A stretch of DNA of 64,000 bases from Selaginella moellendorffii. Lineage: Eukaryota > Plantae > Lycopodiophyta. Both the position numbers and the translations under genes were made by a program. The stretch lies in contig NW_003314273.1 of NCBI RefSeq assembly GCF_000143415.4, positions 2,480,719-2,544,718 on the forward strand. The letters are read 5' to 3'. Below the pieces are notes generated by a model. The model had not been told where the DNA came from. It ran no database searches and saw only the letters and a list, made by a program, of their open reading frames with translations. The first letter of the stretch is position 1. Every line of letters starts with the position of its first letter. Below are positions 3,509-38,529 of the stretch, in pieces.

Positions 3509-5010
3509 ATGGAGGAAGTGAGGATCGTTTCCGTGCAAATGGTTGCGCCGGCAGAGCCGCCCAATCCATCCTCCTTTCGCGAATCGATCAAGCTTACACT
3601 CTACGATCGAGCAATGCGCTTTGCTCTCTACCAGAAGAGGATCCTCTTCTACAATCCGGTGGAGCCGTCCAGCATCGATTGCCACATCCAATCTCTCAAG
3701 GGCAGCCTCGCCCAAGCGCTTGTCAGCTTCTATCCTCTCGCCGGTAGGCTCTCGAGCTCCTCTCTCGAGATCGATTGCTCCACGCTCTCGGTCCAGTTCA
3801 CGGAGGCAGTGACCGATGCAACGCTGGGCGATCTCGCCATCCGGCCCTCGAGTTTCTGTGACAAGCTTTGCGACATGGGATCTTCTCCAACTTGGCCATG
3901 GAGTCCAGATTTGCCACTGCTATTCGCACAGGTAAGCTTAGATCCTCGGAGTTCTTGACAAGTTCTCCGGAGTTTCCGGAAGAATGTACTTCCGGAGAAC
4001 CTACCTTGACTCTTCGTTTTCACACACGGTTTTTCCTTGACCAGGTGACGAGATTTGTCGATGGTGGGATCAGCGTCGCGATCGCTTTCAGCCACCAAGT
4101 TTGCGACGGCGTTAGCGGATGGCATTTCTTCAATTCCTGGGCTCAAATCGCTCGAGATGGTGTCTTGCGAAATCCGCCAGTGGTTTCATACGAAGTGGAA
4201 GAACAAGACATGGAGCTCGAGGAAGCATTCGAGGTCGCAGCGTCCATAGGCTACAAAGTCAAGAAATCAGCGTCATCACCCCGGGATCTCTCCAAACCAC
4301 GCGAATCAATCTCCTCGAGCTCTATGCCGCAGCTGGACGTCAGGCTCTTCCGCCTGGATCAGAGCCACATCTCCGAGCTCAAATCCAGATGCCTGGAAGA
4401 AACTCGCGCCAGCTTCTCCAGCTATGAAGTCGTGTGCGCGTACTTTTGGACGCTAACCGCGCGCCATCGCGGCTTGCGCCCGGATCAAGAGGCCGCGATC
4501 GCGATTCTTTTCGACAGCCGGGGAAGGTTCGCCAAAGTCCCAGAGTTTTACTTGGGAAACGCCATCGCCACCGCGATCGTGAGCGCTAGAGTCGAGGATC
4601 TGACGTCCAAGGGGATTGGTTACGCCGCGGGCCTCCTGCACGACGCCATCGTGAGCATGGACGAGAAGAAGAACCAAGCCCAGCTGAAGTTCATGTATCA
4701 CGTCATGGAAACCGGATTCATCACAGAGATGGAGATCGATCCAGCGTCTTTCAGCCTTGTGGTGAGCTCTCCCCGGCATCCGGTCTACGAGACAGACTTT
4801 GGATTTGGAAGGCCAGCCGGTGTTACATTTGGGACCAACGATTTGAGCGACGGCAAGATCTATCTCTTTCCATCGCCCGCTGGAAACCGGGGTGTGGAAG
4901 TGAGTGTGGTTCTTCATCCAGAGAGATTCACACTAGAACTAGTATTAGACTTAGAGAGTATTGGACTCCCGCAGGATATTCTTGCAAATTCCCTTAAATT
5001 AATTAAATGA
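3509..5010 (+). CDS. BAHD acyltransferase (exons 3509-3931, 4045-5010)
   Basis: Has FYPLAGRL, catalytic HxxxD (SHQVCDG) and DFGFG motifs. The single intron falls after FAQ, the conserved 'Q' intron position of BAHD genes. Confidence 0.93.
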
Positions 5011-5174
5011 AAGACTTTTAACTTTTAAAAAGTTCACATCGAAAATTAATCCAATATCGGGCTTGATTCCTTGAGAAAGTTGCTTAATGTTTTTTCATCC
5101 TTCATCCTCGAGCTTTGGAAACAAATGTCGTCATAGACTTATATGCTATTGTTTCGAATTATGCTGTGTGATCT

Positions 5175-5986
5175 TCACAACGTGTGAACCATATCTTGGA
5201 TCCATATCAATGGATTGGAGATTGTTAACGATGCAAGATCCTTTGGTAGATCATTCCCTGTGATGAAAGCTACTTCCCGGAGCCTCTGTATGGCTCTCGC
5301 CATCTTCGAGTTTGCGACAAGGTGCCATGGAGACTCCAGCAAGTTGGGAGAGAGGAGCAGCGCGTATGCCACGGCCAGCGTCCCGGAGAAGACGTCCAAC
5401 TGAATCGACCATTTGCTCCGCAGCAAGAAGATTGCAAGAGAGGAAAGGGCGGTGGTGCCAGCGAAAGTGGGCAGAACGATCGACCAGGCATAGCTGAAGA
5501 TCCAAGGATCATTGAACTCGAGCATGAGCTGCCAGGCCATGTTGAGCACGCCCACGAAGCACAAGCTTGCCTTGGACAGTTCAATCGTGGGATTTGTCCA
5601 TGCCATCGAAAGGATTCCAGTCAGACCAGAGGCGAGCATGATGAGAGTGTAGATGGTGTTGAAGTTGATGCCCCAGATCACCGCTAGCATCTCACCTGTG
5701 GAAACAAGATGATCCTTTGAGTGCTCTAGCTAGAGAAGGTGATGCAAAGAAACTTACAGAAGATCAAAGGGACTAGTGTGAGGAAGAACTGGAGATCAAG
5801 GCCCTGTTTATCTGGATTGCCTTCAAGATTGAGGATCGCCAAGATGCTGAGAAGAGATTGGAAAACAAGTGGCCAATAGCCCAGCGCGTAGAAGAAACTT
5901 TGCCACTTGAACAGCCACTGGTGATTGCTCCACCGCTGCAAGATCTCCTCTAGACTATACTCACCACTCACCATGGGCAAAGCCAT
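5175..5986 (-). CDS. Divergent half-size organic cation/carnitine transporter-like MFS protein (exons 5986-5758, 5695-5175; ~249 aa); may be a pseudogene
   Basis: A GT-AG intron joins the two ORFs in frame. N-terminus SLEEILQRW...FKWQ and LLESPWHLVANSKMARAIQRLREVA resemble the OCT/SLC22 start and the post-TM6 ESPRWL motif. Confidence 0.5.
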
Positions 5987-6840
5987 TGTCCTTCCTTTTG
6001 AAACCCTAACTCAGAAATCTCAACAATCCTTAAAATGTTTCAGGAACTAGAAAAAGAATATATTTAATTGTGTTAGATTCTTAATATATAATTAAAATTC
6101 TTTTATTTCAGAATAAACTTTAATGAAAATAAATTGAGAATTTTAAAAAATAAATTAAAATATTGTCAATGGAAAATAAAAATAAAATTAATGGTTTCAT
6201 TAATTTATATAAAGAAAATTTAATTTTTGAGTGTTAGAGGGTTAAATATTATGATGTAAAACTATGTTAAAGTATAAATTTATTGTGAACTTAAGAATCC
6301 ATTCTAAGTGTAACAAATTCAACAGTAAAATGAAAAAGAAACCCTTTCTTTTGCAATTACTTCTCTTTCTATGAATATCCAAAGATAAAATTTTAATAAT
6401 CCAAGTTTTGGATATTCATTAGCATTTACAAATATTATTGTCAGTGTTGGATATTAAATATATTTAAGTTAAAATTATTAATTTTAAAAGTAAATTTCAT
6501 TAAATTAATTAAATTTATATGTATGTATGTATGTTTAAAATTTAAGTTTTTAATAATTGGTATAAAAAAACAAGAAATAAATTTCTTGAAAATATAATAT
6601 TTACTTTATATTAATATTAAATTAATCTTATATTAATTTTATTTTATTCCTAGAAAAAGAGGAAATGGATGAATTCCTTAATATAATCAAAATTACTCAA
6701 AATTTTTAAATACACATAATTAAGTATTTCAGCTCTTTGTAAATATAAATTTTATTCAGGCTTTATAGTTCTAAAATCGCTTGTTTTGCTTAATAGTAGT
6801 GTTATTCTTACTTATTAATCCAATTGATCAAATAAAGTTT

Positions 6841-7025
6841 AGAATTATAAGCATGTTTGTAATTTATAAACACAAGATTAATCTTATTGCATATCAACCA
6901 TTAGATGATAGAATAAAAAGAATATACTAAAAAGAGTTTAAGAAAGTTTATAAATTATAAACATGTTTATAAATTATAAATACAAGATTAATCTAAATGA
7001 ATAACAACCGTTAGATGGTAGAATA
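6841..7025. repeat. Imperfect ~75-bp direct repeat in an AT-rich spacer
   Basis: AATTATAA.CATGTTT.TAA.TTATAAA.ACAAGATTAATCT...CAACC.TTAGATG.TAGAATA occurs at ~6841-6915 and ~6951-7025. Confidence 0.6.
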
Positions 7026-7291: not shown

Positions 7292-10230
7292 CTATTTCTC
7301 TCCAAACCACTGGTTGAGAGTCTCCATGACAACGTCGCCCTTGATCACGGGATTGTCCGGCAGTAGAGGCAAGCTGTTGTCAGGCTTCTCCAAGCGCTCC
7401 ACCACAACCGGCGCGGCAGGGACGCTCTCCCACCAGGCCTTGAGTCGAGCGAAAAACTCACGCACCATTGGCCTCCGGAACTTGAGCTCCATGGTGAACT
7501 GATCCAGGACAAGGAAAGCCACGATGATCTGGAATGGCAGCGTCACGAGAAGGCCAGCGGCAGCGATCACGGAGAGCAAAGCCAAGTTGGTCGCCTGGAA
7601 AACTCAAACCAAGATCAACAAAATGAAAGAGAAGTTAAGAGACTACCTTTGGATTGCTGGACAGAGCGATCGTCCGGAGCTTCAAGAGAGCTACGTTGAC
7701 GTTCTGGAGGAACGTCTCGAGTTGAGCCAGTGCTTCCTTCAGGGAGATTATCTTTTGGAGTGTGTTGGAGGGAGGTTGTTCCTGGATTGTAACTTTTCCA
7801 AAGTCCGGCTCTACGTGTCCATTGGCTCTCAAACCTCGCAGTGCCAAAACTCCGATGCTACTGATAAGTAAAACACTGGGAAAAACGTAGCGCAGCCATC
7901 TCCTACAAAAGATATATAGTTAAAAATGAACGAGAAGAGTTCTTCCAAGTGCTTACAAGTATAAGGCACCATAGAAGCACGCCAAGAACGCCAGTGTCTT
8001 TGGTGGCTCTTTCCATTCTTTAAGTTTCTTAAGCTCCATCACCATCGCTAGCAAAGGGGACATAAGTTCCTGCCAAAACAAAAACACGACACTAACTTCC
8101 ATCGCTAGAAAAGTTGCGTACCTTGAAAAGATCAATGTTTTCTGGAATTCCTGCGATTATAGCCCCGTCAATGGTTGCTTTCGTCAACTCAAGCTCCCTG
8201 TTTTGCTCCTTGCATTCCCCCACTGCCCTCTCCAGCTGACTCAAGCCTCCAACTACGTGATTCTTTCCCAGAACCATGCCTCCTCCTCCCAGTCTTTGCC
8301 TCCAAAATGCTATGGACTCTGCGCGGTTCCACGTCTCTGAGTCCATCCATTTTCGGAAGTAGATGCTACCATCCGTGCCAACTATATAGCCGCTTGAAGT
8401 GAGTTCGTTGTTTTTCGGGACCTGCGAGTTCTCGTAAGAGCTTAGCTCCATCCTGCCACCCCAAAAGTCTACTGCCAGCGATTGAAGCACCAAGAACCCA
8501 GCTGCTGTGCTCGAAACATATGAATACTGGAGAAGTTTCTCTGGATGCTCCGGTGCTTTCTTTAAGGTAGCTTGCAAAGCTTGAAACCTTGCTATCCCAA
8601 GCAGCGCACTGTTTATGGCCCTTCTCCTTCCAGTCTTGGAGACGTAAGCGTATTCTGGAGAAGTTTCGCTCGTCTTTGGAGCATACTCTCGAATAAACCT
8701 GTGCACCATCATCATTTCTAGAATGAACAGGTACCAAATTTCCCGGCGACCTCTACCTGTGAAGTCGACAAATTCCAGCACCCATGGATCGTCCCTGCAA
8801 GATAGCATTCAAGTACAGATATTACACATCGCTTAAGTCAAAAACGTTCTCAAAACGTACTCCGAGCTCGAAGAAATCGAAATTGCAGAATCAAAGAGCT
8901 CCATCCCGAGGGGCCCAACTCTCCTACGTTCAATTTTAGCCTCGGGTCCATCAAAACTGAGACGCAGTGTTTGTTTATCCTGGAAAGCAATCCTGAAAGG
9001 CTATGCAATACATAAAAGTCAGAAGGACTAATGCTGGAAGAAAAAGAAACCAAGCTAAACCTCGAAATAGAGAGCACGATCCGTCATAGTCAAATTTCCA
9101 GGCCACGCCATCCCATTATCCCATTTCTGCACAGGTTGCCTCCGGCTAGCTCCAATACAAATAAGACTTTCGTCACGATCGAGCTCTAAGTTACATTCCT
9201 GACGAAAAATGTGTCGACCATTTACAACACTGAATTTAGAGAAAACATAAAACTTAAAACAGAATCGAAGGAAAAAAACAAAAAGGTTTTGACACTCACC
9301 CGCACAGCTCGCAAAGATATCTATCCCAAGTGTCAAACGACAAACCATCTTTGTCGCCAGTAAGAGCTTTAAACAGGTGGTGCGCCGTGGCTAAGTCGGC
9401 AGCTCCAGGTATGGAGGGCGCGATTCTTGCAAACGCTGGTTCTTGTACAAGTGTCTGCACCAAAAAGAGTTTTGGAGACGAAAATAAAAACAGAAAAGAA
9501 GGCTTACTTGAATTTTTTCTTGAGCTTCCATGTAAGGTTGCTGCCATGCCAGCATTGTTATAAAGGTGAGACGTCGAAACGCAGCATCCTGGAGAAGGAG
9601 AGAGCGATCACAAACAAACGCTTTCACAAAGTTATTGACAAGTTCTACCTTTAAGTTTGGTATGAAATCTCCAGAGCCTCTTCCCAGGAACCGAAAGCAG
9701 CAAAACTCGAGTAAGTTTCGTGCTTCGTTTTGCACAGAAACTGGAGCATATCTTTCGAAATGTTCTCTCATCCTCCTGCCTGTCACTCCACTCAATCTTT
9801 TTTTTCCCCCGCGGAGAAGGAAAGAAAAAACCGTCATTGGATTCTCATCGATCGATCGAACTAGAACACTTACCGACTGAATTGCTCAATCGCATTGATC
9901 GCAGCAGTAGAAAGCTCGCCTCTAGGCGTTTTACTGTCCACTGTTTGCTCCTTAACACTAAACGCCTCTAGCAGCTGCCGTTGCGCGTCGATTCCACCAT
10001 CGTCCCTCACATTCTGATCGCCTTGCCAGAACGCACTGATGACTGCGCCAGAATCGAGAGCTAGAAACCAAGAAATCTCACAATATCATACCATTCCGCC
10101 TCGAGCAATGCCTCAATCGTCGAAACGCCGCCTTGCGACCGCAGCAGCAGAGATTCAGCTGGAAGAATACGCCGCGATTGACTGGAAGAAGCCAGGAACT
10201 CATCCCCGGCGCCCAGACACATCCCTCCAT
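7292..10230 (-). CDS. DUF639 family plant protein, multi-exon, with a transit-peptide-like N-terminus
   Basis: Exons encode ELSTAAINAIEQFSR, ARNLLEFCCFRFL, AFARIAPSIPGAAD, AWPGNLTMTDRALYFE, ATIDGAIIAGIPENIDLFKEL and WWESVPAAPVVV, typical of DUF639. Likely ATG at 10230 (MEGCVWAPG). Confidence 0.88.
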
Positions 10231-10286
10231 TTTTCCTTGTTCTTCGCTAGGGTAGAAAGCGAATATGCCACCTCCACATACTTTAT

Positions 10287-10340
10287 TCCACGTAGTTTCC
10301 ACGTGGGCACTGTACAAAGCCCTTATCTCTAGCCGTTGGA
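10287..10340. promoter_or_regulatory. Candidate cis-elements upstream of the DUF639 gene: G-box CACGTG (10300-10305) and MSA-like TCCAACGGCTA (10330-10340, minus strand)
   Basis: Exact motif matches 70-110 bp upstream of the ATG; no functional evidence. Confidence 0.3.
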
Positions 10341-10359
10341 TAAATCCTCTAAATTTGTG

Positions 10360-10760
10360 AAAAGTATTTACCTAATCACTTCAGCTCAAAATCTTAAACT
10401 GTTGGAGAAGAAATTTGGAGCAAATAAGAAGAGGGAAAAACAAAATTTAAAATATTAACCTCTACAAAGTATTGTTTAAACGGATAAGGATTGAACTTTA
10501 AACGAATGCAAACTTTAAAAGCTTTTTAATAAGAGATATTAAGCAAGTGTTAAAGGAAAAGTGATTTTAAAGAAACCCTAAATGAAATGTTAATAAAAAT
10601 TTGCAAAGATTGTTCTTGATTTAAAAGTGCTGTGCATAGCATACCGAGCAACCACTTGAAGCTTTTCAAAAGCAGTGATGAACAGTCTCGTTCCCAGGCA
10701 TTTCTTTGCATAACAGCTCTTTGATTGCACATGAGGTTTGTGATTGGGATTCTTTAAGTA
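10360..10760. pseudogene. Collapsed relic of the 13.1-14.5 kb locus (Chibby-like promoter plus SNI1 3' exon fragments)
   Basis: 10362-10440 resembles 13098-13205. 10615-10690 resembles SNI1 exon sequence at 14300-14365 (CATAGCATACCGAG.AACC.CTTGAAGCTTTTCAAAAGCAG.GATGAACAGTC). 10738-10760 resembles ~14508-14530. Confidence 0.6.
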
Positions 10761-11399
10761 GCAAAATTAAGTGGCTAGAAGCCATTGGAATCTCTATACC
10801 ATAGAATATGGAGATCTTTTGATTTTTTTACTTTCGAAAAGTACTTTCGAAATGCCGCTGCAGCTCTCGAATGTAATTAGCTAGCAAAATAAAATCAAAA
10901 TCAAAACTTTGAGATCTTTAATGAAATTTTACAAGATGCAAATCGTCTCGTCATGGCCTTCTTTGCTCCATCCAGCACAGTCCTGTTACCACTTGTTCCA
11001 GTTTTCACCAAGCTTTCAGAGGTATGCTCAGGTATGCTCGTCTAGTTTTTAATTTCTCACTCAAAGAAAAGCCTTTGAGCTAACCAAGGCATCAAGCTTT
11101 GCTGTTGCTCACGCTACCAAGCAATCCCCCGATCATTCGAGCTCTCTTCTAGCGCTCTTCATTCTACGATCTTGCCACTCAAGCCGTAGCATTGCAAGTA
11201 CTGTCCATGTCTATGAATTTATCTTAGATGTGCTGGGCTCTACTTTTTACTTGTTATGTGCCTTCCTTCTGCGTGTTTTCTCTCTCTTGATGGCAAGGCT
11301 CCATTTTACATGAGCTTAGCTGCCGTCTTCGCAAATGCTCTTTTGGACTGGGGAGTAGCACTATACTAATATGGCTACTCCATCTTGTTTAAGGAAGTA

Positions 11400-11830
11400 C
11401 ATAATTTTAAACACACGATTAAGAGCTTGGCCACGAAAGATGTTTCATCCTCGAGGAAGCATGCCTTGAACTCCTCATCGTCAATGCGTACTGCACTGAC
11501 TAGGGCCAAGAGCTAGAAAAACACAGTTCAAAAACTTCTTCAGTGTTCACAGTAACACAAGATTGGTGGAATTTTGTCTCTTTTTGTGAATCTAGTGTTA
11601 AAGATAAGTGCACTCAGTGTGCAATCTTTGCACATGTGCATGCGAGTGAATAACTAGGTACAAAGCTCTCCATGTACCACGCTTGGATTGCGCTCCCCCT
11701 CCGCAACTCGAGCGTGGCATCCACGGTTTCTCTCAAGCCCGGGGGCACAACCGCAGCCCCAAGCTTGAATAGGCGATCCTCCTCCCTGCTGTAGACTTCA
11801 AGGGAACAAGGCTCATTCGAGATAAAAGGG
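11400..11830 (-). pseudogene. Lineage-specific coding fragments related to the 12248-12890 gene
   Basis: Translates to ISNEPCSLEVYSREEDRLFKLGAAVVPPG... and VRIDDEEFKACFLEDETSFVAKLL; the latter resembles ARIDDEDEEDVKAEFLVYNKQSETSFMFKLL of the neighbouring gene. Confidence 0.4.
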
Positions 11831-12247
11831 AACTACTTCAACTGCTGAGGGATTGCAGCTCTGTCTGCTCGTGAGACAAAGAAACAAAAAAAGAGTGGTC
11901 GCCAACTTTGTGGAAAACAGCATCTATATCTGCTCTGAACAGCACTAGACACAGTCGACAAAATAGAATGTTAGCAAATGGCGATGCTAGGCTGCTGCTA
12001 AGAGTTGCGCGATCATATGTGCTTGTCCAGGGCAGGAGGAAGATCGATGCAGGTTGTTTATCATCTTTTCTTGTTCTCTTAGTCATCACTGAAAAATGAA
12101 ACACTTAACAGGTTTTTGATCCAAGCAAGTAAGTTTCATTGATTTCTTGAAAAAGTCAGTATTCGTGAGCTCCCGATCAATCTTTGGATGAGGGATTTCG
12201 TGGACAAAAGCAACAAGTCAAAAACCAACAAAGCTGCATCCGCCCGA

Positions 12248-12890
12248 TTAGACATCGATGTCGTATGTGCGGTGAGCCAGGAGCTTGAACATGAAAGATG
12301 TTTCACTCTGCTTGTTGTACACGAGGAACTCTGCCTTGACGTCCTCTTCGTCCTCGTCGTCAATGCGAGCCAGGCATGCTGCCTCCTTTTCCGGTGAACT
12401 CTTGCGCGAGCCCACGAAGCACTCCCCCAATCTCGACATCCTCGCCATGTAACAGCCGCGGCTCTCTGGCTCATAATCCATTGGCGTCACGTAATACACC
12501 TTCGTCTCCGGGTCGCTGAGCACGCCCAAGTGGTTGCCCGATGCGCGCTGCCTCTGCAGGACGTGGAACGTGAAGGGAGGGTGGCCATGCAGCTGCCGCA
12601 TGGCTGGAGCGGCCCCCTTACGGATCGCCTCGTCTCTGAAAAATAAACTGAAAAATCGAAAATGCTGAAGGCTCACAAGATCGGCTTCTCTCGACAAGTT
12701 CGACAGGAAGCTCCGAGTTGCTCAACCACAGCCGCGCATCTAACACGGCAATGTAGACGTTCTCCTCGTGCGTAAGGTAAGGGCACATCGTAATAAGAGA
12801 AGCAAGCCTTCCGCCGTCACTCAGATCTACCAGGAGCTGCTCCAGATCCTTGCAGTTACAGTGGTTTTTGTCGGTAGTTTCAACTCCCAT
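12248..12890 (-). CDS. Hypothetical lineage-specific protein (at least 2 exons)
   Basis: GC-rich, codon-like ORFs MGVETTDKNHCNCKDLEQLL... and ...DEAIRKGAAPAMRQLHGHPPF...YDIDV*, separated by a pyrimidine-rich TTTCAG acceptor near 12637. No recognisable domain. Confidence 0.45.
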
Positions 12891-13255
12891 GGCTTGCAGC
12901 GCGGGATGTCATTAAGAAAGAAATCCCGTTATGGGTTCCTTTAACAGCAAATTAAACTCCACAGCGAGAAAAGCAGTGGGGTATTCCTCCTAGGTACGTA
13001 TTTCTCCACGTACCACGCTTCGATTGTCTCAAACAGAGCTCCACCCTATGGAGATGAGAGCGTGTACGTCCATTGGCCAGCCCTAAAAGACAAGATTAAG
13101 TATTTACTTAATCACTTCAGCTGAATCTTAAGCCGTTGGTGATTTATACACACAACCCTTGAAACCTGCGAAGACAAGAAATTTGGAGCAAAAGAGAAGA
13201 GGGCAAATCTCTTTGATTTCTCCCCTCTTGGGTGGATTTGTTTTTCCTCTTGGCG

Positions 13256-14092
13256 ATGTCTTGCTCGTGCTGTTGCTGTACGTGCTCGTATTCAACGCTG
13301 GAATGGTGCACAGCTCCACTTTGGAAGATTTATTGCATCCTTCGCTACTTTGAGAAGGAGCTGATGCATCAAATCTTTGTCATTGGCCTCTTTAGAAACT
13401 GGTAAGCTTCCTTTCTTCGAGATTGTCCTGGAAAAAGAAAACAAAATGGTTTTCTCAGGAGACAAAGAGGCGTTCGATCGGAGCAAAACCTAGCAGAGAT
13501 TGAGAACCTTGGGCCGATCACGCTCACTTTGGACAATCAGCCTTTCACCTGTCAAGATGGATCATGGTCTGCTGGTAAAACTCAATCCTTTACCTCTCTC
13601 GAGAATGGAAGTACAAGTCTTAGTTGTGCTCGATCCAGGTCCTGGAATCCCGAGAACAGCGATGGGAATCCATCGAGAGATTTATGTCTTGAGGCGTGAA
13701 AGGAAACACCTGGTAAAACTCGAAAAAAAAAGCACAAAACAAAACTCGTAAGTAGCTCCAAAAACTTACAGTTCTTGGATTTGTAGAAGAGAGAGGTGGC
13801 CAAGTACGCAAGGAAAACAGAAGAGCTCAAAGGCATGAAGGATAAGATCAACATGCTGGACTTCAAGTACCAGCTTCTTCTCGACATGGTAAGAACTTAA
13901 GCTCGCTGGAGTTAGAAGGAAACTTTTCTGAATAAATGGATTTGATCAATCGATTGATTGATTGAGCAGTGGACCACGAAAGTCATGGGTGGTGAGAATG
14001 GAGGCGGCGGTTCTCCGAGAAGAGGCCTCAGTAGGACACCATCACCACGAAAGAGTCCGAAGAACACTCCACAGCGGAGTCGCAGCCGATAA
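13256..14092 (+). CDS. Chibby-like coiled-coil protein (exons 13256-13401, 13459-13574, 13639-13713, 13787-13888, 13970-14092)
   Basis: Five GT-AG exons splice in frame to ~186 aa: Cys-rich N-terminus, LGPITLTLDNQPFTCQDGSWSA, coiled coil ending KINMLDFKYQLLLDMW, and an SR-rich tail. Pattern resembles Chibby (PTMNLAGQSLKFENGQW...NNLLRLKVDILLDML). Confidence 0.62.
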
Positions 14093-14200
14093 AAATCTGT
14101 TAATACCTGTGAAGATCGTCAAGAACAAACATTACTCCAGAAACGAGTAATGCGTTTACCGGTCTTAGAGATTAGTCTTTCTCAATTGGAGTTGACGACT

Positions 14201-16171
14201 TCAGATGTTGCTCAAGACCTCCGCCACAACCAAGGCCTGCTTTGCAGTCGGATGGACAATGAAATCCCTGGAAAACAGGAAACAAATGTTTTGGAGAACT
14301 TTGATTTAGGCATAGCATACCGAGGAACCGCTTGAAGCTTTTCAAAAGCAGCGATGAACAGTCCTGCAATCGAAGAGCCGTCGGAAGGATTGATGCAGAG
14401 AATTGCCTGGAAAAAGAAAAGAAAAAGAAAAAGAAAAAGAAAAAGAAATTGTTTTGCAAAATTGAGAAACAAAACAGCGATACCTGAAACGCGTGAGCAA
14501 GCAGCAATTGTGATTGTGATTCTTTGAGTAAGACCTGCGCAGTTCGATCATCGAAGCGTTGCAGCAAGACTTCGAAGGATGAAAAATCTATAGGTGGTCG
14601 CTACAAAAAGATAAAAACGTTCGAACTCTTCCAATCATAAGTTACAGAAAGAAAACCACATACCCTTGAGGAAAATAGCTTAACAAAACACTCCATTACG
14701 AATTGGAGCTTCTGCTCGGGTTTCTGGATTGCCTTATGAAATAAAAACATCGTCGATATTTAAAAGCATGTAAATAGATAAACACACCTCCAAGAAAATA
14801 GGCATTTTTTCACCGTTATTCTTGAACAGTTTGTCCACTAACTGGTCGATATAATCCTTCGTTAAGCTGACAAAGGTAAAGATTATCGCACCATTATAAA
14901 CAACGATTCTCACCTCGTTTTCAGTTCATCAAGGTGAAATAGCTTGTGAAAACAATAAGAGACGTTATTACAACAAGGTCACAGAAAAACTTACCAGAGA
15001 TATCAACGCTTGGGTCGATTTATAAATGATGTCGAAGTACTGGAGACTGCTATTGTTCTCTGTCACTCCCTCCAAACTAAAATGTAGCAACTCCAGGAGG
15101 ATCTTATCAAAGGAAGAATTTCCACCGCACATCTCCAACTGCTTATAAACGCAAAACCTCTCCATATTTGCACCTGCGAGATCTTCAAACTTTTAGCTTC
15201 TACCCTTTCGAAAAAAAACACATACCATCGAAGCTTGCCCGTGTCTGCTCAAAATCTTTGACCAACTGATCAATGAAGTGCCGAAACACAAGTGTTTTCA
15301 CCGGAAACTGAAACTCCATTGTAAAGAAAAGCATGTAAGGAGAAAATAACAGAAAGAAATAAATAAAATTTCACTTACGGCGCAGATTGGAGACTCTTTA
15401 ACCATTAAATCTCTGGCAAGCGATGACAGATTCTAGAAGGCATCCGTCAGAACATGGAGAAAAGGAAAAATTAAATAAATAAATGGTGAATTGAGTTACC
15501 AAGGAGGTAATGCAGGAAACATTTTTGTAAGGGACTTCCGACGCGTAAGATATGACTACCTGTGAAAAAGAAAAGGAAGAAAGATAGATTGATCAGTATG
15601 ATCGAAGAGGTTACCTCGTCTAAGTCTTTCAAAAGTCTGTAGCTCGCCATTGCCACCTCCATGGATTTGCTTTCTCGCAAACACGAGTAGACAGCTCTGT
15701 AGATGCTCCTAGAAATCCAAAACTTAGAAAAGTTTTTCTTTCTTTTCTCTTTTCTTTGCTTACTTGCTTGGCCTGGCTTTCTCGGGCATCACAAACTCCT
15801 CAAAAACGACATCCAGGAACGAAAGCTCTGAAAAGAGTTAACGAGAAACTAAAGAAAAGAAAAACCATAAAAAACGAGAGAGCTCATACTGTCGTCTCGA
15901 ATGGATTCGGCGTCTTTGACGCCCTGTGAATCCAGCATTGCGAGCACATTGTCTTCCATGTAGCCCACACCAAAGTCGACAGTTTCCTGGAAAAAATTCG
16001 TTCATGAAAAAGAAATCGACAGGAGAACCATTTCTCACCCCTTCTGGCTCCGGCGCACCACCGCGCGCAGCAATCTACAAAACCAGCGAGCTCAACACAC
16101 GCCACCGGAGGGAAAATGCTTACCCGGGAAGACGATCGCCGCTGCCGCTTCATCGTCCCGCCCAAACTCAT
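14201..16171 (-). CDS. SNI1: SNI1 (Suppressor of npr1-1 Inducible 1; NSE6-like SMC5/6 subunit), many short exons
   Basis: Exons encode MEDNVLAMLDSQGVKDAESIRDD, LSFLDVVFEEFVMPEKARPS, SIYRAVYSCLRESKSMEVAMASYRLLKDLDE, LLLAHAFQ and the C-terminal AKQALVVAEVLSNI*. These parallel Arabidopsis SNI1 (LEANTLAMIDSTGAKD..., MYQAIFRILRFGKTLELITASFQLL). Confidence 0.8.
14411..14447. repeat. (AAAAAG)n microsatellite in an SNI1 intron
   Basis: About 6 tandem units are visible. Confidence 0.8.
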
Positions 16172-16286
16172 TAGGGTTTACACTAGAACAGGATATTCCT
16201 TTCCCCCTTAAGAGCCTTTTGGTCGATCGAGGCAACGAGTGTGATAGCTTGATTGAGGCTCGCGAGACCATCGCCCACGATCAGGG

Positions 16287-17867
16287 ATGAGCTGCCGCAA
16301 TGGAAGAAATGCCGCCACTTCCACTCCATGAGATCCTATTCATCTAGATCCTATCAAGCTCCACTCCCTGGTTCCTGGAAATCCCCCCAAAGCATCTCGA
16401 CCTACGCCTCTGCGATCCGGCTTTGCAGGAACTCGAATCGCTCTCCGTGCACCTAGTTGGAAATGGCTGGGATTGAAACACCTTCTCCTAGTGGAATAGT
16501 TTGGCAAATGCGGCAGCTTGGACGAATCCCACTGGGCATTTGAGAGAATTGCGATGCACTCATGGATGTATTATATTATTTAGAATAAAATTTTGGATGT
16601 GTAAATCTTGAGAAGGGGAAGTTACAATGAAAAATTGACTCCATTTTTGAGATCATGACGGCAGCCTACACTGGCAATGGGAATCTCCACGAAGCTAGGA
16701 GGATCTTCGCCCAGATGCCTAACAAAGATATTGTGTCATGCACTGCATATTCCCAGGTGCGGAGACATGTTCGACTAGATGCCGCAGTGGTCGTGGAACG
16801 CAATCATAAGGGTATATTCTCTGTCTGGCTCTCTCGACACCGCAAAGGATCTTTTTGACAAGATGCCCCAGCAGACAATCGTGTGCTGGTCGCGGAATAT
16901 GCCCAGAAACGGCGAGTGAGAAGATTCTAATGAGGGATATGGTGCTGTGGAACAAGGTGGTTGACGTGGGAATGGCGAACAAGGCCATCAAGCTCTTGGA
17001 GGCGATGTCTCATGGAACACGCGAACGAAGGTGTTTGTGCAGCTTGGAGATCTCGAAAGCTCAAAGAGGTCGTTTGAATCCACTCCAAAGCCGGACTTGG
17101 CATCATTTACTACAATGGTGGTGGCGTTTTCGCAGCAGGGGAAGCTCCCAAATGCGAGAGAGATGTTCGATCGGATGCCCTGTCGAGACACAGTGGTGTG
17201 GACGACAATGGTTTCGGCTTATGCTCAAAACAGGCATGTCAACAGCGCGAGAAATCTGTTCCATGAGATGCCAGAGAAGAACTTGTGTCGTGGAACGCAA
17301 TGGTGGCGGCGTACGGACAGAACTGCGATGGAGCTACTGCAGTTCATCTGTTTAGATTAATGGATCTGGAGGGTATTCAAGTGGATTCTATAAGTTTGGT
17401 GAGTGCTTTGGATTGATGTTCTTCCGAGACAGCTCTGGCCGAAGGATTAAATATAGAATGCTATGAAGCTTAAACTATGAATTCAGAACTTTGCAGGCTC
17501 TGGGAAAATTGAGGGACAATTGAAGGACAGATTCACCACAAGTACTGAATATCACATAGGAAGAGTCTGAGGTTTATGGTGATGCTGTGGAGCTGGGATT
17601 TTATCAAGATACAACTCTTGCAAACTCGCTAGTTGCAATGTATGCGAGCTGTGGATGCCTTGGTGAAGCTTGCAAGCTGTTTGATGGAATTCTAGCAAAG
17701 AATGTGGTGTCTTGGCCGACCATGGCGCTGCTTACGCATAGAACAGCAAGAACTATGCCACTGATGCCAAACAAGGTAACTCTCACAACTGTCCTAAGGC
17801 TGTGTAGTCAAAGTGGTAAACTATGTGATGCCAGAGAGAACTTCATACTTGTGACTGGAGATTTTGA
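16287..17867 (+). pseudogene. PPR pseudogene, decayed duplicate of 32098-33924
   Basis: Near-identical blocks to the intact PPR are interrupted by many small deletions, frameshifts, stops, two foreign inserts (~16560-16652, ~17447-17583) and a 3' truncation. Confidence 0.9.
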
Positions 17868-17899
17868 GCCTCTCAACATGGGGAGAAACACATGAATCC

Positions 17900-20800
17900 A
17901 GTTGTCAATTAAAGTGATATCTTGTGTGAACTCCTTACCCTAAAAGTGGAGAGTATATTCCCAATATTTTAACAATAGAATATTCTAGAGAAACTCACTC
18001 AATGTTATGCATATCCTAATAGACAACCATAGAGGATTGCATAGACTTTATTGCATACAAAAAACCCATGACCATTACAACATAATACACTATATTAACA
18101 CTGCTGCAAGAAAAAGTAGAGGGAAACACAAAAGAAAAAGCCAAGAAAGAGGAAAGGAGGAAGTGAAAAATTCCAGATTCAAAGGAAAACCATGATGGGC
18201 AAAACTAGTTTCATATTTCTTTATTACTCCCTTTTTATTTTGCTTGATTTTCCATTTTTTCTACTTTGCTTTGGGTTAAGTGTTAAGTTCCAAGTGAAGG
18301 AGAATCACTTATCTGGAATTCTTAAGTTTTATAAAGTTTTAGTGTTTCTATAAATATGCTCAACTAGTAGATTTAGACAGTTTTTATAAATAACCAATAG
18401 GACTAAACGGGACCACACATGGGTATAATAGTGAAAGTGTTTGGTAGACATGGTAAGTTATCATTGGCAATATTAAGGAACTAGTCTCAATACAAAGGGG
18501 TTTTTATCATTAGTTAATGCAAGATATAATGAAATAGGAACTCCTTATATGGGCTAAGTATGCTTACTTAATAGCATATAGAAATTCTATCCTTATATTC
18601 GTCCAGTCTAAGTACACTCAAAATGCCCAATTAACTCCATTAGCACAAGAAGGATTAATAAAAGGTCTAACAATACTAATTTTTTGCCGTGCTAACAAAT
18701 AAATTTCAATACCCACAATTACATTTGCAATACATCCCCAATCTCTTGAAAGGAAGCTTAGGTATATTTTAAAATTGTTATACCAGTAAATGCATTTATA
18801 AGGAGCTTTGTATCCCATACTTGAAGTAACTCCTTAGTAGCTACAATATTTTAAGTAATATAAAGCTTCTTCTTCATCACATTCTCAAGCTTGCTCTTCA
18901 ATTTCTTTTCATTATTACGATACCAAGTCTTGAGAAGCTCCAAGCAAAAAACTTATTCATTGAAGGAGAGTTTGCTTTTTACAATGTTATAAATTAATTT
19001 TTCATGTGCTTTTCCATTTCTTGTAAGTATAAAGATTTCAAAGTGGAATGAGAAAGATAAAAAGTTCATTGCCATGAGAGCATATCTCCACAATGCAATC
19101 CAACTAATCTTGATTCTGTTGAATATCTACAAATTGACCTTTGACTTCTTCAAATTCAAAATGCATTACTCAATCTGTCATAGTTCAAGGTTCTTTTTCC
19201 CCTCATCAACTATTTGCATAATCTTCAAATACAAGTTTTGCTCTACCTTAACAATTAGGTAAAAGGAAAACTTATAAATAGAAAAATACAAGTTTATGCA
19301 AGAGAAGTACCTTTGCTCAGACATCAACCAAAAAATCCATAGGCACCTATTACTAGATAAGCAACTTCTTGCATTTACGTACAACAAGTTTTGCTTATAC
19401 TACTTCCATAACCTTGCAACTTTGATTTTTGAGAAAGATAGAACATGCTAACATATTAAAGGTGCTTAATCTTATAGATTAGGATATGCACTTGGAATGC
19501 AAACTAGTTAAGCTTGTAATATAGTTGGTGAAATCAAAAGCTATTAATGAATTTTTACATGCTGATTTTATGACATGCTAAATTAAACTTCATAGCTTAG
19601 TTCAATCTTTTAGTTCCACAAATACCACTAGAACAGAAATATATCACTTATAATTATCTTGAAAGTTTTCTTGAATACACCTTCAAAGCACTAGCCACTA
19701 GTGGTTTTTATTGATAATGTAGAACATTCAGCCTACAAAGGCTTTTATCTTTTTATGATACACTATCAAAGCATCGAATGCTTGAAATTTCATTTGCTAA
19801 ATTGATCCCAAGTTTGCTTGATCTCCCAAGTAACTATGTTTATACAATTAGTTTATAAGAATGATAATGACAAAGCCACAAATTTTTCTTTTCCAATTTG
19901 CTAGTTTACTTCATATATTCAACTACCTCCACCTTAGCTTTAGTTAATAAATGTTCCAACCGTGTGCCTAAATTCAACTTCTGTGAAAAAGGTATAAATA
20001 GCCATGTTGAGGCTATAGGCCAAATGCACCTAGTGACTTTGTTTGAGATGACAAAGTGGAATTTTAAATTTTTGAAGTCCTCTTTAAGCCATTTCACCTA
20101 CACTTTATTGATAATTCATTCTTGAGCCTAGACAATAATATTATGTACAATGATATTAACCTCTACCATATTTAAAGCCTAGCCTTCAACTATTATTTTA
20201 TTTCCACCATCTATATTACCACTTATATGTTCTACCTTATTTCCATCATTTCTAGCATTAGTAGCTAATTGTACTTGATGATTACTATCAATAGCTATAA
20301 TCAACTCCTTCATTCCCAAGACTTTCAACATCAAGGTTAGCAACTACTCCATTCATGTGAATGTTGTATTAGTCAAAAGAGTGTTATCAAGGGTGGCTAG
20401 TGCAAGTGAAGTTTCACATTTTTTTTTTGATGAAGTGCTAATTATAACACGCTTAACTTAATTCACTCTAACATATTTGGCTCTATATAAATCAAAATGC
20501 TATAGAAGCAAACACCAAATTTCATAAGTGATTTAGATGGCCTTTGATGTAAATAATGTAATTACTGTAAAGTGATTAAATTAATAGTATATATCATCTC
20601 TAGAATTTTTATAAAAGAAATTTGGTTGGTCTTGAGGATTAGCAACAAAAGAAGGACAAGCTATATCACATGCTATGAATACTGCTAAAAGAGGAAGAAG
20701 TTGCTACAAAAGAAGCTTTAAAATGAACATAAATGATAAACAAAAAAGAAAAAATGCAATCTTGAACATTAGATAGCACCTTCTATCCATTATTCTCTAA

Positions 20801-32097: not shown

Positions 32098-33924
32098 ATG
32101 AGCTGCCGCAATGGAAGAAATGCCGCCACTTCCACTTCCAGATCCTATTCATCTCTGGCAGATCCTATCAAGCTCCACTCCCTCCACGACGTGCTCGCGG
32201 CCATCGATTCCTTGAAATCCCCCCAAAGCATCGCGACCTACGCCTCTGCCATCCGACTTTGCGGGAATTCGAGATCGCTCTCCGCCGCCAGGCGAATCCG
32301 CGATCACCTCGTTGGAAATGGCTGGGATCGAAACACCTTCCTCGGCAATCTCCTGGTGGAATTGTTTGGCAAATGCGGCAGCTTGGACGAGTCCCGCCGG
32401 GCATTCGAGAGAATCGCGACGCCCAACACCTACTCATGGAACATCATGACGGCAGCCTACACCGGCAATGGGAATCTCCACGATGCCAGGAGGATCTTCG
32501 CCCAGATGCCCGACAAAGATATCGTGTCGTGGAACGCCATGGTTACCGCATATTCCCAGGCGCGGCATTTTCTGCCTGCACTAGACATGTTCGACAAGAT
32601 GCCGCAGTGGGATGTCTGGTCGTGGAACGCAATCATGAGGGTATATTCTCTGTCTGGCTCTCTCGACACCGCAAAGGATCTTTTTGACAAGATGCCTCAG
32701 CGGACAATCGTGTCCTGGAACACGCTGGTTGCGGAATATGCCCAGAAACGGCATCTCCGAGATGCCGTGGAAATGTTTGAGAAGATTCCAATGAGGGATA
32801 TGGTGCTGTGGAACGAGGTGGTCATGGTCTTCCTTGACGTGGGAATGGCGAACGAGGCCATCGAGCTCTTGGAGGCGATGCCGCAGCGCGATACCGTCTC
32901 TTGGAACACGCGAACGAAGGCGTTTGTGCAGATTGGAGATCTCGTAAATGCAAAGAGGTCGTTTGATTCCACTCCAAAGCCGGACTTGGCATCATTTACT
33001 ACAATGGTGGCGGCGTTTTCGCAGCAGGGGAAGCTCCGAAACGCGAGAGAGATGTTCGATCGGATGCCCTGTCGAGACACCGTGGCGTGGACGGCAATGG
33101 TCTCGGCTTATGCCCAAAACGGGCATGTCAGCAGCGCGAGAAATCTGTTCCATGAGATGCCAGAGAAGAACCTGGTGTCGTGGAATGCAATGGTGGCGGC
33201 TTACGGACAGAACTGCGATGGAGCTACTGCAGTTCATCTGTTTAGATTGATGGATCTTGAGGGTATTCAAGTGGATTCTATAAGTTTGGTGAGTGCTTTG
33301 GATGGATGTTCTTCGAAGACAGCTCTGGCCGAAGGGAGAATTCTCCATGCTGCTGCTGTGGAGCTGGGCTTTGATCAAGATACAACGGTTGCAAACTCGC
33401 TAGTTGCAATGTATGCGAGCTGTGGATGCCTTGGTGAAGCTCGCAAGCTGTTTGATGGAATTCTAGCAAAGAATGTGGTGTCTTGGTCGACCATGGTCGC
33501 TGCTTACGCACAGAACAGCAAGACTCATGAAGCACTTCACCTGTTTAGAACTATCCCGCTTGAAGGAGTGATGCCAAACGAGGTGACTCTCACAATTGTC
33601 TTAAGCCTGTGTAGTCAAACTGGTAAATTACACGATGCAAGGGAGAACTTCATACTTGTGACTGGAGATTTTGGAATTGAGGCACGAATGGATCACTTCA
33701 TGTGTATTGTGGATCTTATTGCAAGATCGGGGAGATTAGAAGTGGCAGAGGAGCTAATAAACAACATGCCATTTGAGGCAGATCCTTTGGCATGGAGGAC
33801 ACTGCTTAGTGCTTGTAGGAATCAAGAGAACTCAAAGCTTGGAGCCCAGATTGCTGGCCAAGCACTTGATGCAACAATGTCAGATTCAGCTTCTTATGTT
33901 CTCTTGTCAAATAGCTTCTGTTGA
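32098..33924 (+). CDS. PLS-class pentatricopeptide repeat protein with E-type C-terminus (608 aa, intronless)
   Basis: Tandem ~31-35-aa repeats (FDKMPQR..VSWN), C-terminal HFMCIVDLIARSGRL...MPFEAD..AWRTLLSAC...SYVLLSN. No DYW domain. Confidence 0.93.
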   Translation: MSCRNGRNAATSTSRSYSSLADPIKLHSLHDVLAAIDSLKSPQSIATYASAIRLCGNSRSLSAARRIRDHLVGNGWDRNTFLGNLLVELFGKCGSLDESRRAFERIATPNTYSWNIMTAAYTGNGNLHDARRIFAQMPDKDIVSWNAMVTAYSQARHFLPALDMFDKMPQWDVWSWNAIMRVYSLSGSLDTAKDLFDKMPQRTIVSWNTLVAEYAQKRHLRDAVEMFEKIPMRDMVLWNEVVMVFLDVGMANEAIELLEAMPQRDTVSWNTRTKAFVQIGDLVNAKRSFDSTPKPDLASFTTMVAAFSQQGKLRNAREMFDRMPCRDTVAWTAMVSAYAQNGHVSSARNLFHEMPEKNLVSWNAMVAAYGQNCDGATAVHLFRLMDLEGIQVDSISLVSALDGCSSKTALAEGRILHAAAVELGFDQDTTVANSLVAMYASCGCLGEARKLFDGILAKNVVSWSTMVAAYAQNSKTHEALHLFRTIPLEGVMPNEVTLTIVLSLCSQTGKLHDARENFILVTGDFGIEARMDHFMCIVDLIARSGRLEVAEELINNMPFEADPLAWRTLLSACRNQENSKLGAQIAGQALDATMSDSASYVLLSNSFC

Positions 33925-38000: not shown

Positions 38001-38288
38001 TCGCTCCTTCCCTCTAACATTCTCCCTCCCCCGATGTCTATCCTTGTCTTTCCTCACGGGCGGGAAAATGGCGTGAATGATCATCAGCAGCTTCTTGACG
38101 AAGTAATCCTGGAACTCCGCCCCGTTTTCCTTGAGCCTCCCGCCGAATTCCTCCAAGCTCTCGCTGTGCCGGCCAAGCTCGATGATAAACTCGGCCAGCG
38201 TCTTGTTGCTGCACCCTAAGTGCGTTTCCAGCTCGGTGCATACCTTTGACACGAGCGACAAGTACTCAAGCTTCTCCTGGAGCTCCAT
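35019..38288 (-). CDS. PRP22: Pre-mRNA splicing DEAH-box RNA helicase PRP22/DHX8, intronless
   Basis: ~1089 aa: N-terminal [18 protein letters not shown]1 domain, [26 protein letters not shown]2/OB fold, terminal WRLSKRR. Confidence 0.96.
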
Positions 38289-38529
38289 CACTGCAGCTCT
38301 GCCCTAGCCCTAGAAATCCGCCCTTTATAGAACTTGTTTTAATCTTTATATAACCATGGTTGCTTACTAAACTTTTAGGCTGTTTATTCAGTTAAGCAAA
38401 CTTTATTCCTTTTTGTTCACCAAATGTTCAAAAATTGATACTTTAAAGATCCACCCAATCTTGTATTTATGACAATTTTAGTAAGAAAAGTTTGGAGGTT
38501 ATTAATTTTTTAAAATACAGCTCAAAGGC

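What the first reader, a model, noticed from the sequence alone, without database searches (positions are those of the whole stretch)
13256..14092. Hidden five-exon Chibby-like (basal body/transition zone) gene in a land plant
Seen: five short GT-AG exons, invisible in the ORF track, splice in frame to MSCSCCCTCSYS...EIENLGPITLTLDNQPFTCQDGSWSAGPG...REIYVLRRERKHLKREVAKYARKTEELKGMKDKINMLDFKYQLLLDMWTT...SPRRGLSRTPSPRKSPK. Known: Chibby (CBY1) has a P-x-L-x-L...F-x-x-G-x-W block followed by a coiled coil ending K-x-x-LLLDML, and is mainly studied in animals for basal-body docking. Inference: this may be a plant Chibby-like protein used in flagellated sperm. It carries additions: a Cys cluster (possible S-acylation anchor) and an SP/SR-rich phosphorylatable tail.
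Basis: partly seen in the sequence, partly recalled or inferred. Interest (0 to 1): 0.8.

Follow-up and report, generated by a model that had tools for sequence, protein, structure and literature searches.

The report
Spikemoss Chibby gene, already annotated
The five short exons are a real gene of the spikemoss Selaginella moellendorffii for a Chibby-family protein (in animals, a docking factor for the base of cilia); public databases and a 2012 paper already record it, and its role in sperm is still untested.

Summary
Five GT-AG exons at 13256-14092 (+) join in frame to 186 codons. The organism is Selaginella moellendorffii.

The allele on the other haplotype is already in GenBank as SELMODRAFT_411549. 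It has 149 aa and the same exons 1-4, and it passes Pfam's Chibby threshold (27.8 bits against 24.8). Enjolras et al. 2012 already mentioned "possibly related" Chibby proteins in this species.

The LLLDM|WT junction, all four intron positions and their phases match the moss Physcomitrium and a Selaginella paralogue.
- Relatives with the Chibby domain occur in Mesostigma, Chlorokybus, Klebsormidium, a liverwort, mosses and ferns. No named hit is a seed plant.
- The Cys-rich N-terminus is probably translated and is specific to this locus. The SP-basic tail is shared with mosses.

Weak point: four RNA data sets show only a spliced antisense RNA, the long 3'UTR of the convergent neighbour. No sense junction was seen, and the tissues are unknown. 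A role at sperm basal bodies is inferred, not shown.

The joined 186-aa model was not sent to any search tool.

The parts
13256..13401 (+). Exon 1 (ATG at 13256; 48 codons + 2 nt, phase 2). Contains a Cys-rich N-terminus (8 Cys in the first 27 residues), then a helix-forming extension, then I-G-L-F, which corresponds to the ancestral M-G-I-F start.
   Evidence: Same exon in GenBank allele P0001. Residues 28-46 are conserved with paralogue P0042; 8 of the 10 identical residues use different synonymous codons. An in-frame stop lies 13 codons upstream of M1, and no other ATG precedes the conserved part.
13459..13574 (+). Exon 2: the conserved RSE...LGPITLTLD...F.C.DGSW block, which is the non-coiled-coil part of the Chibby domain.
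   Evidence: Alone it hits only PF14645, profile positions 37-59, 12 bits. 100% identical to P0001. AF2 predicts three short strands at residues 69-87.
13639..13712 (+). Exon 3: linker and start of the coiled coil (REIYVLRRERKHL).
   Evidence: The LRRER motif is invariant in moss orthologues. The junction after it is phase 0, as in Physcomitrium.
13787..13888 (+). Exon 4 (102 nt): coiled coil ending in NMLDFKYQLLLDM.
   Evidence: Alone it hits only PF14645, positions 72-99, 12.5 bits. The exon is 102 nt in Physcomitrium and in the paralogue too. AF2 helix 95-148 has pLDDT 92-98.
13970..14092 (+). Exon 5: WTTKV..., a Gly run, then an [ST]P-x-[KR]-rich basic tail and TAA. Missing from the GenBank model of the other allele, which reads through the exon 4 donor to ...DMVRT*.
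   Evidence: DM|WT is conserved across green-lineage relatives. The junction position and phase equal those of Physcomitrium and paralogue P0042. The haplotypes differ here by an in-frame 3-nt indel.
13071..14200 (-). Antisense RNA: the long 3'UTR of the convergent neighbour gene. It is spliced on the minus strand (introns 13549-13593 and 14104-14156 or 14109-14161) and covers the whole Chibby gene.
   Evidence: Contigs of three runs from three studies, plus stranded raw reads. All joints read CT..AC on the + strand. All 56 raw reads have the same orientation as those on the neighbour's coding exons.
14201..16160 (-). Convergent neighbour gene (380 aa in GenBank, no Pfam family). Its stop codon lies 108 nt from the Chibby stop. 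The upstream end given here is approximate.
   Evidence: Called gene in L002 at 4935-6880. Translation of the spliced minus-strand transcript. Exon scans gave only a weak UBA_N4BP1 hit.

Best explanation
This is an intact five-exon protein-coding gene of Selaginella moellendorffii for a member of the Chibby (CBY1) family. Shown: the gene structure, the family membership, and the architecture. The architecture is a disordered Cys-rich N-terminus, a helix, a small three-strand block, a roughly 50-residue leucine-zipper helix ending in LLLDMW, and a basic SP-rich tail. Also shown: domain-bearing relatives were found in plants and streptophyte algae that make flagellated cells and in no seed plant. 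Inferred from animal CBY1 and Drosophila Cby: the protein dimerises through the coiled coil and sits at the distal end of the basal bodies of developing spermatozoids. There it would help couple them to membrane before the flagella grow. The segment corresponding to the animal N-terminal FAM92/CIBAR-binding region (here IGLFRNWRQRGVRSE) would serve as the partner-binding site. The Cys cluster, if S-acylated, would give this paralogue a membrane anchor of its own. The SP-x-K/R tail may be phosphorylated. Real Chibby-family gene: about 0.97. Role at sperm basal bodies: about 0.6.
For: Exons 2 and 4 each hit only PF14645, in colinear order. The allele P0001 (SELMODRAFT_411549) scores 27.8 bits against a cut-off of 24.8. 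Nine other streptophyte relatives were scanned and eight score 26-46 bits. A plant-only profile run against 1.84 billion proteins gave 36 hits. The named ones are Sphagnum, Physcomitrium, Chlorokybus, Mesostigma, Adiantum, three Selaginella loci and trebouxiophytes. The word search adds Ceratodon, Riccia, Ceratopteris and Klebsormidium, with no seed plant. Intron positions and phases are identical in Physcomitrium and in the paralogue. Between the two haplotypes the CDS shows 2 changes in 561 nt, one of them an in-frame 3-nt indel. Non-coding sequence shows 9 changes in 540 nt, with indels of 8, 1 and 7 nt; Fisher p = 0.03. AF2 gives helix 95-148 at pLDDT above 90 and strands at 69-87. Animal function comes from Enjolras 2012, where CBY sits at the distal basal body and transition zone. 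The JBC 2025 paper shows that the N-terminus of CBY1 binds the FAM92A BAR domain and that the coiled-coil dimer raises affinity.
Against: No sense-strand transcript or junction appeared in four RNA data sets; only antisense RNA was seen. The ancestral start codon (M of MGIF) is ATT here, so the conserved N-terminal segment is internal, behind a 42-residue extension. Selaginella has at least three Chibby-like loci, so this one may have diverged in function. Divergent relatives occur in trebouxiophyte algae (Coccomyxa, Parachlorella, Apatococcus); to my knowledge these have no flagellate stage. No FAM92/CIBAR or DZIP1 partner was looked for in plants. No localisation or mutant data exist for any plant member.
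Confidence: 0.7

Rival explanations
1. It is a real Chibby-family gene, but this paralogue has moved to a role unrelated to flagella. It would act as a lipid-anchored coiled-coil adaptor elsewhere in the cell.
For: There are three Chibby-like loci in Selaginella. The N-terminus is unique and Cys-rich, and the ancestral start is lost. This locus has one of the lowest Pfam scores among the intact streptophyte models: 27.8 bits against 32-46 for other species, with the two Selaginella paralogues at 26.3 and 29.3. Relatives occur in trebouxiophytes that I believe lack flagella.
Against: Both conserved blocks, all intron positions and the WT junction are retained. Domain-bearing relatives were found only in lineages with flagellated cells. 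No sense RNA was seen in the sampled runs, which fits a narrowly expressed gene.
Confidence: 0.2
2. It is a silent or decaying duplicate, no longer expressed, that lies under the neighbour's 3'UTR.
For: Only antisense RNA was seen. The ancestral ATG has changed to ATT. One radical Tyr/Asp difference separates the haplotypes in the coiled coil.
Against: The reading frame and all eight splice sites are intact in both haplotypes. The exon indel is in frame, whereas the non-coding indels are not. Variation is lower in the CDS than in introns and flanks. The N-terminal extension shows a synonymous-substitution pattern against the paralogue.
Confidence: 0.08
3. There is no plus-strand gene. The only product of the locus is the minus-strand RNA, and the plus-strand frame is chance.
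For: All RNA seen is minus-strand and spliced on that strand.
Against: The minus strand has no credible ORF across this stretch. The plus-strand model is 41-46% identical to moss proteins at E about 1e-15. It also shares four intron positions with them.
Confidence: 0.01

Closest known systems
SELMODRAFT_411549 (GenBank/UniProt hypothetical protein, S. moellendorffii; P0001)
   Same: This is the same gene on the other haplotype. Exons 1-4 and their junctions are identical, and the protein is listed with Pfam PF14645.
   Different: It has Asp instead of Tyr at residue 104. The model ends ...LLLDMVRT* by reading into intron 4. It therefore lacks the conserved WT... exon 5 and the SP-basic tail.
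Animal Chibby (human/mouse CBY1, Drosophila Cby)
   Same: It is a small protein with a basic N-terminal segment and a conserved block of the type L..L...F..G.W. A leucine-zipper coiled coil ends in LLDM. It belongs to Pfam family PF14645, and the family tracks organisms with motile cilia.
   Different: From memory of the animal sequences: the plant coiled coil is about 19 residues longer, the plant proteins continue with WTMR.LD and often an SP-basic tail, and this locus adds a 42-residue N-terminal extension with a Cys cluster. The plant profile alone did not retrieve animal CBY1 at E below 0.001, so the link rests on the Pfam model. The vertebrate 14-3-3 and beta-catenin functions were not examined.
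Physcomitrium patens LOC112292548 (XP_024396945, P0041) and other streptophyte Chibby-domain proteins
   Same: Five exons with identical intron positions and phases. The 102-nt exon 4, the DM|WT junction and the [ST]P-x-[KR] tail are shared.
   Different: These proteins start directly at MGIF and have no Cys-rich extension. None has been studied experimentally in the literature I could search.
Selaginella paralogues SELMODRAFT_415304/417494 and 422193
   Same: The same five-exon plan, and the N-terminal IL.Y.E..L.H.IFV extension is shared with 415304.
   Different: About 38% identity. 415304 keeps a Met at the ancestral start position and has MGVSG in place of the Cys cluster.

Membership tests
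Chibby family (Pfam PF14645) | Match to the family HMM at or above the gathering score | tested here: met
   Allele P0001 scores 27.8 bits against 24.8, E = 2.8e-6, profile positions 38-100. Window exons 2 and 4 alone score 12 and 12.5 bits, are colinear and are the only hits. The joined 186-aa window model itself was not scanned because it has no reference.
Chibby family (Pfam PF14645) | Conserved non-coiled N-terminal block (L..L...F..G.W type) | tested here: met
   Exon 2 aligns to profile positions 37-59. LGPI.L.LD...W is invariant in moss orthologues. AF2 predicts three short strands there.
Chibby family (Pfam PF14645) | C-terminal leucine-zipper coiled coil ending in the LLDM motif, used for homodimerisation in CBY1 | tested here: met
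   AF2 gives a single helix at 95-148 with pLDDT 92-98. Heptad positions are L105, L112, Y119, L126, I133 and Y140, read from the sequence. FKYQLLLDM is near-invariant. Dimerisation itself was not tested.
Chibby family (Pfam PF14645) | Basic segment at the extreme N-terminus that binds FAM92/CIBAR BAR domains (about the first 22 residues of CBY1) | tested here: inconclusive
   Orthologues start MGIF.KK..PRSE. Here the equivalent segment is internal, at residues 43-57, behind an extension. No plant FAM92 was sought.
Chibby family (Pfam PF14645) | Occurs in organisms with (motile) cilia and is lost where cilia are lost | tested here: met
   Domain-bearing named hits all come from lineages that, by textbook knowledge, make flagellated cells. 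No seed plant or zygnematophyte is among the named hits. Limits: unnamed metagenome hits, a candidate length window of 82-260 aa, and divergent trebouxiophyte relatives.
Chibby family (Pfam PF14645) | Expression in ciliated or sperm cells | tested here: inconclusive
   Four RNA data sets of unknown tissue show only antisense RNA and no sense junction.
Chibby family (Pfam PF14645) | Localisation at the distal basal body or transition zone, and a role in basal-body docking | not testable with these tools
   Needs tagging and mutants. Known for Drosophila and mouse.

The most novel reading that the evidence does not exclude
Chibby is an ancestral basal-body docking factor kept by every streptophyte lineage that still builds flagella. 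Non-seed land plants have lost all known MKS/NPHP transition-zone proteins and the Y-links (Barker et al. 2014), so Chibby would be one of their few remaining animal-type links between basal body and membrane. In Selaginella, one paralogue has replaced the ancestral N-terminus with an S-acylated Cys cluster that anchors it directly to membrane. Outside spermatogenesis it is held silent under the neighbour's antisense 3'UTR.
Probability: 0.2. Interest if true: 0.6.

Novelty: already known. Interest (0 to 1): 0.33.

Why it matters
The gene and its family assignment are already public, so the identification is not a discovery. Three points are still useful.

First, the public model of this gene is truncated. 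The conserved exon 5 is missing, so the annotation should be corrected.

Second, in 2012 Chibby was thought to be missing from bikonts other than Trichomonas, apart from "possibly related" Selaginella proteins. Clear Chibby-domain proteins are in fact present from Mesostigma to ferns and were not found in seed plants. This supports an origin before plants and animals split, followed by loss together with flagella.

Third, mosses and Selaginella were reported to lack all known transition-zone complex proteins. A retained Chibby is therefore a concrete candidate, testable in Physcomitrium or Marchantia, for how plant sperm basal bodies attach to membrane.

Tried and rejected
- **Rfam scan of the window:** nothing found.
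- **PDB sequence searches:** exon 4 and exon 2 gave nothing. The plant profile gave only generic coiled coils at E above 1. No full-length Chibby chain was found.
- **RNA support for the sense gene:** none of the four junctions appeared in X1, X2 or X7 (contigs) or X23 (stranded raw reads). Only antisense RNA was seen. This is reported as no support, not as refutation, because the tissues are unknown and the reads tool allowed one call.
- **Literature:** no paper links Chibby, CBY1 or FAM92 to Marchantia, Physcomitrium or other plants, apart from Enjolras 2012.
- **Earlier scan notes:** none mention Chibby, FAM92, CIBAR or DZIP1.
- **Neighbour gene:** Pfam scans of its exons gave only a weak UBA_N4BP1 hit.
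- **Ceratopteris exon mapping:** my script failed, probably because the introns are long.
- **N-myristoylation of the ancestral MGIF start:** considered and not claimed. Most orthologues do not fit the G-x-x-x-[STAGCN] rule at position 6, judged from the sequences against the PROSITE pattern as I remember it.
- **Transmembrane segment in the N-terminus:** rejected. The best 19-residue Kyte-Doolittle mean is 0.82.
- **Not run:** Complex prediction (homodimer) and fold search. The family question was already settled by profile, and a long helix would return generic coiled coils.
- **Joined model:** the joined 186-aa protein was built only inside scripts for local alignment. It was not sent to any search, family, fold or structure tool. 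Exons were searched by reference, and the annotated allele P0001 stood in for exons 1-4.

Full report
**1. The observation**

Reading window 12800-14600 and rebuilding the model in a script confirms five plus-strand exons:

| Exon | Coordinates |
|---|---|
| 1 | 13256-13401 |
| 2 | 13459-13574 |
| 3 | 13639-13712 |
| 4 | 13787-13888 |
| 5 | 13970-14092 |

- The introns are 57, 64, 74 and 81 nt, all GT..AG.
- The exons join in frame to 561 nt, which is 186 residues plus TAA.
The only slip is one missing Cys in the quoted N-terminus.
- Each exon lies in an ORF of under 60 aa, so a standard ORF track would not show the gene.

**2. Organism and public status**

- Other ORFs in the window are PLS-type PPR proteins with an E motif and a BAHD transferase, so this is a land plant.
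- I ran a word search with the stop-free frame that contains exon 2, scored on exon 2 only. It returned one protein, P0001, which is SELMODRAFT_411549 of Selaginella moellendorffii. It has 149 aa, is 100% identical over exon 2 and is listed with PF14645.
It then reads through the exon 4 donor and ends ...LLLDMVRT*.
- P0001 carries Asp where the window has Tyr. The same T>G at 13683 is seen in other strains' contigs, so P0001 is the other haplotype's allele.
- Its locus L002 (GL377580.1) aligns to the window at 96.4% identity over 12977-17911.
- Enjolras et al. [quoted passage not shown] They found no CBY in other bikonts except Trichomonas.
- The gene is therefore hidden only from an ORF track, not from the databases or the literature.

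**3. Family membership**

- Searched one by one by reference, exon 2 hits only Pfam Chibby (profile positions 37-59, 12 bits).
- Exon 4 also hits only Chibby (positions 72-99, 12.5 bits). The two hits are colinear.
- The annotated allele scores 27.8 bits against a gathering score of 24.8.
- The match spans the non-coiled N-terminal block as well as the coiled coil. It is therefore more than a generic coiled-coil resemblance.
- AlphaFold2 on a 14-sequence alignment gives this layout:
  - a disordered Cys cluster at residues 1-18
  - a helix at 22-51
  - a short helix at 57-64
  - three short strands at 69-87
  - one long helix at 95-148 with pLDDT 92-98
- The heptad positions in the long helix are L105, L112, Y119, L126, I133 and Y140.

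**4. Relatives and distribution**

- P0001 finds two Sphagnum proteins at E about 1e-15 with 44-46% identity, both listed with PF14645.
- A profile of the three conserved cores was scored against all 1.84 billion representatives. It gave 36 proteins at E up to 0.001.
- The named hits are:
  - Sphagnum (two paralogues)
  - Physcomitrium patens
  - Chlorokybus
  - Mesostigma
  - Adiantum
  - two further Selaginella loci (415304/417494 and 422193)
  - the trebouxiophytes Myrmecia, Asterochloris, Botryococcus and Coccomyxa
- A word search with a 14-sequence profile adds Ceratodon, Riccia, Ceratopteris, Klebsormidium, Apatococcus, Trebouxia and Parachlorella.
- Of the nine other streptophyte proteins scanned, eight pass the Chibby cut-off at 26-46 bits. 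The exception is a broken Adiantum model.
- The trebouxiophyte proteins share only the C-terminal WNL..FKYQLL.DMWAMRVLDNE motif and carry no Pfam call.
- No named hit is a seed plant, a zygnematophyte or Chlamydomonas.
It comes with limits:
  - many hits are unnamed metagenome or Logan proteins
  - considers only proteins of 82-260 aa
  - unannotated genes would be missed

**5. Gene model**

- I mapped P0041 onto its Physcomitrium locus L001. It has five exons with phases 2, 1, 0, 0 after exons 1-4 and a 102-nt exon 4.
- The Selaginella model has the same four positions, the same phases and a 102-nt exon 4.
- The paralogue P0042 in L003 shows the same plan as annotated in GenBank.
- Exon 5 is therefore correct and the GenBank 3' end of SELMODRAFT_411549 is a read-through artefact.
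- Differences between the two haplotypes over 13100-14200:

| Region | Length | Changes |
|---|---|---|
| CDS | 561 nt | one substitution and one in-frame 3-nt indel |
| Introns and flanks | 540 nt | nine events, with indels of 8, 1 and 7 nt |

- Fisher's test on these counts gives p = 0.03. The sample is small, but the pattern fits a constrained coding sequence.

**6. The two "additions"**

N-terminus:
- Most orthologues start MGIF.KK..PRSE.
- In this locus the corresponding codon is ATT (I43), so translation must start upstream.
- Residues 28-46 align with the N-terminal extension of paralogue P0042 (pattern IL.Y.E..L.H.IFV).
- Eight of the ten identical residues use different synonymous codons. 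That is the signature of a translated, selected sequence.
- The internal Met37 is Leu in the paralogue. The only in-frame ATG between the upstream stop and residue 28 is the one at 13256.
- The Cys-rich start is therefore probably translated, unless an unseen upstream exon exists.
- No orthologue or paralogue has the cluster of 8 Cys in 27 residues, so it is specific to this locus.
- S-acylation is plausible but untested. There is no transmembrane-like segment.

C-terminal tail:
- [ST]P-x-[KR] motifs are shared with Physcomitrium (4), Ceratodon (5) and one Sphagnum paralogue (3).
- The tail is therefore a feature of one plant subgroup and not an addition of this gene.

**7. RNA evidence**

- I laid three contig sets from three studies, plus one stranded raw RNA-seq run, on 12600-14700.
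- Every joint reads CT..AC on the plus strand, so the introns lie on the minus strand. They are 13549-13593, 14104-14156 or 14109-14161, 14267-14319 and 14601-14663.
- The contigs run unspliced through all four plus-strand introns.
- All 56 raw reads have the same orientation as reads on the neighbour's coding exons.
- Translation of this RNA shows that the neighbour's ORF stops at about 14201. That is 108 nt from the Chibby stop.
- The RNA is therefore the neighbour's 3'UTR of about 1 kb. It contains two introns and is antisense to the whole Chibby gene, reaching past its start codon.
- No sense transcript was seen.
- Run identities and tissues are coded. A spermatogenesis-specific gene would be absent from vegetative samples. 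This is an open weakness, not a refutation.

**8. How it most likely works**

By homology with animal CBY:
- Animal CBY localises to the distal basal body and transition zone and is needed for normal basal body function.
- The N-terminal region of CBY1 binds the FAM92A BAR dimer, and its coiled-coil dimer raises the affinity more than tenfold.
- I therefore infer a dimeric adaptor at the distal end of spermatid basal bodies that links them to membrane.

Context:
- Barker et al. [quoted passage not shown]
- A Chibby retained across flagellate streptophytes is therefore a notable survivor.

None of this functional account is shown for any plant.

**9. Verdict**

The phylogenetic prediction is borne out among named hits.
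- The gene is already annotated and was mentioned in print, so I rate it as already known.

**Method note.** The joined 186-aa protein has no reference. It was built only inside scripts for local alignment. It was not submitted to any search, family or structure tool.

Noticed in passing
window 13071-14200 (-): The convergent neighbour gene has a 3'UTR of about 1 kb that contains two introns, one of only 45 nt (13549-13593). The other intron has alternative boundaries, 14104-14156 or 14109-14161. The UTR overlaps the entire Chibby gene in antisense. Whether it regulates the sense gene is unknown.
   Followed up: partly
window 14201-~16160 (-); L002 4935-6880: The neighbour gene (380 aa in GenBank) has no Pfam family on record. 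One exon (15852-15968) gives a weak UBA_N4BP1 hit (E = 0.007). An (AAAAG)n run lies in its intron at 14406-14456.
   Followed up: partly
L002 4001-4644 (GenBank SELMODRAFT_411549): The public gene model is truncated because it reads through the exon 4 donor (..DMVRT*). A related Logan-predicted protein (P0016) shows the same kind of read-through. SELMODRAFT_417494 (P0007) lacks the N-terminal exon that its allele 415304 has.
   Followed up: yes
P0029, P0032-P0035, P0056-P0062 (trebouxiophyte algae): A divergent group in Trebouxiophyceae (Myrmecia, Asterochloris, Botryococcus, Coccomyxa, Apatococcus, Trebouxia, Parachlorella) keeps only the C-terminal WNL..FKYQLL.DMWAMRVLDNE motif and has no Pfam Chibby call. 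To my knowledge some of these algae have no flagellate stage. Chlamydomonas was not among the hits.
   Followed up: partly
window 35019-38291 (-): A single uninterrupted 1090-aa ORF encodes a DEAH-box helicase with an S1 domain, HA2 and an OB fold (DHX8/PRP22-like architecture).
   Followed up: no
window 32098-33924 (+), 44466-46421 (+), 16640-17400 (+): Two intact intronless PPR genes, one with an E motif. A third PPR-like stretch at 16640-17400 looked frame-broken when read by eye.
   Followed up: no
window 9001-12926 vs L002: Identity between the haplotypes drops from 96-98% to 85-91% in 10529-12926, with many indels, just upstream of the Chibby gene.
   Followed up: no
window 46719-48521 (-), 3868-5010 (+): A Na/Ca-exchanger-domain protein (600-aa ORF) and a BAHD-type acyltransferase ORF. 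Both look like ordinary plant genes.
   Followed up: no
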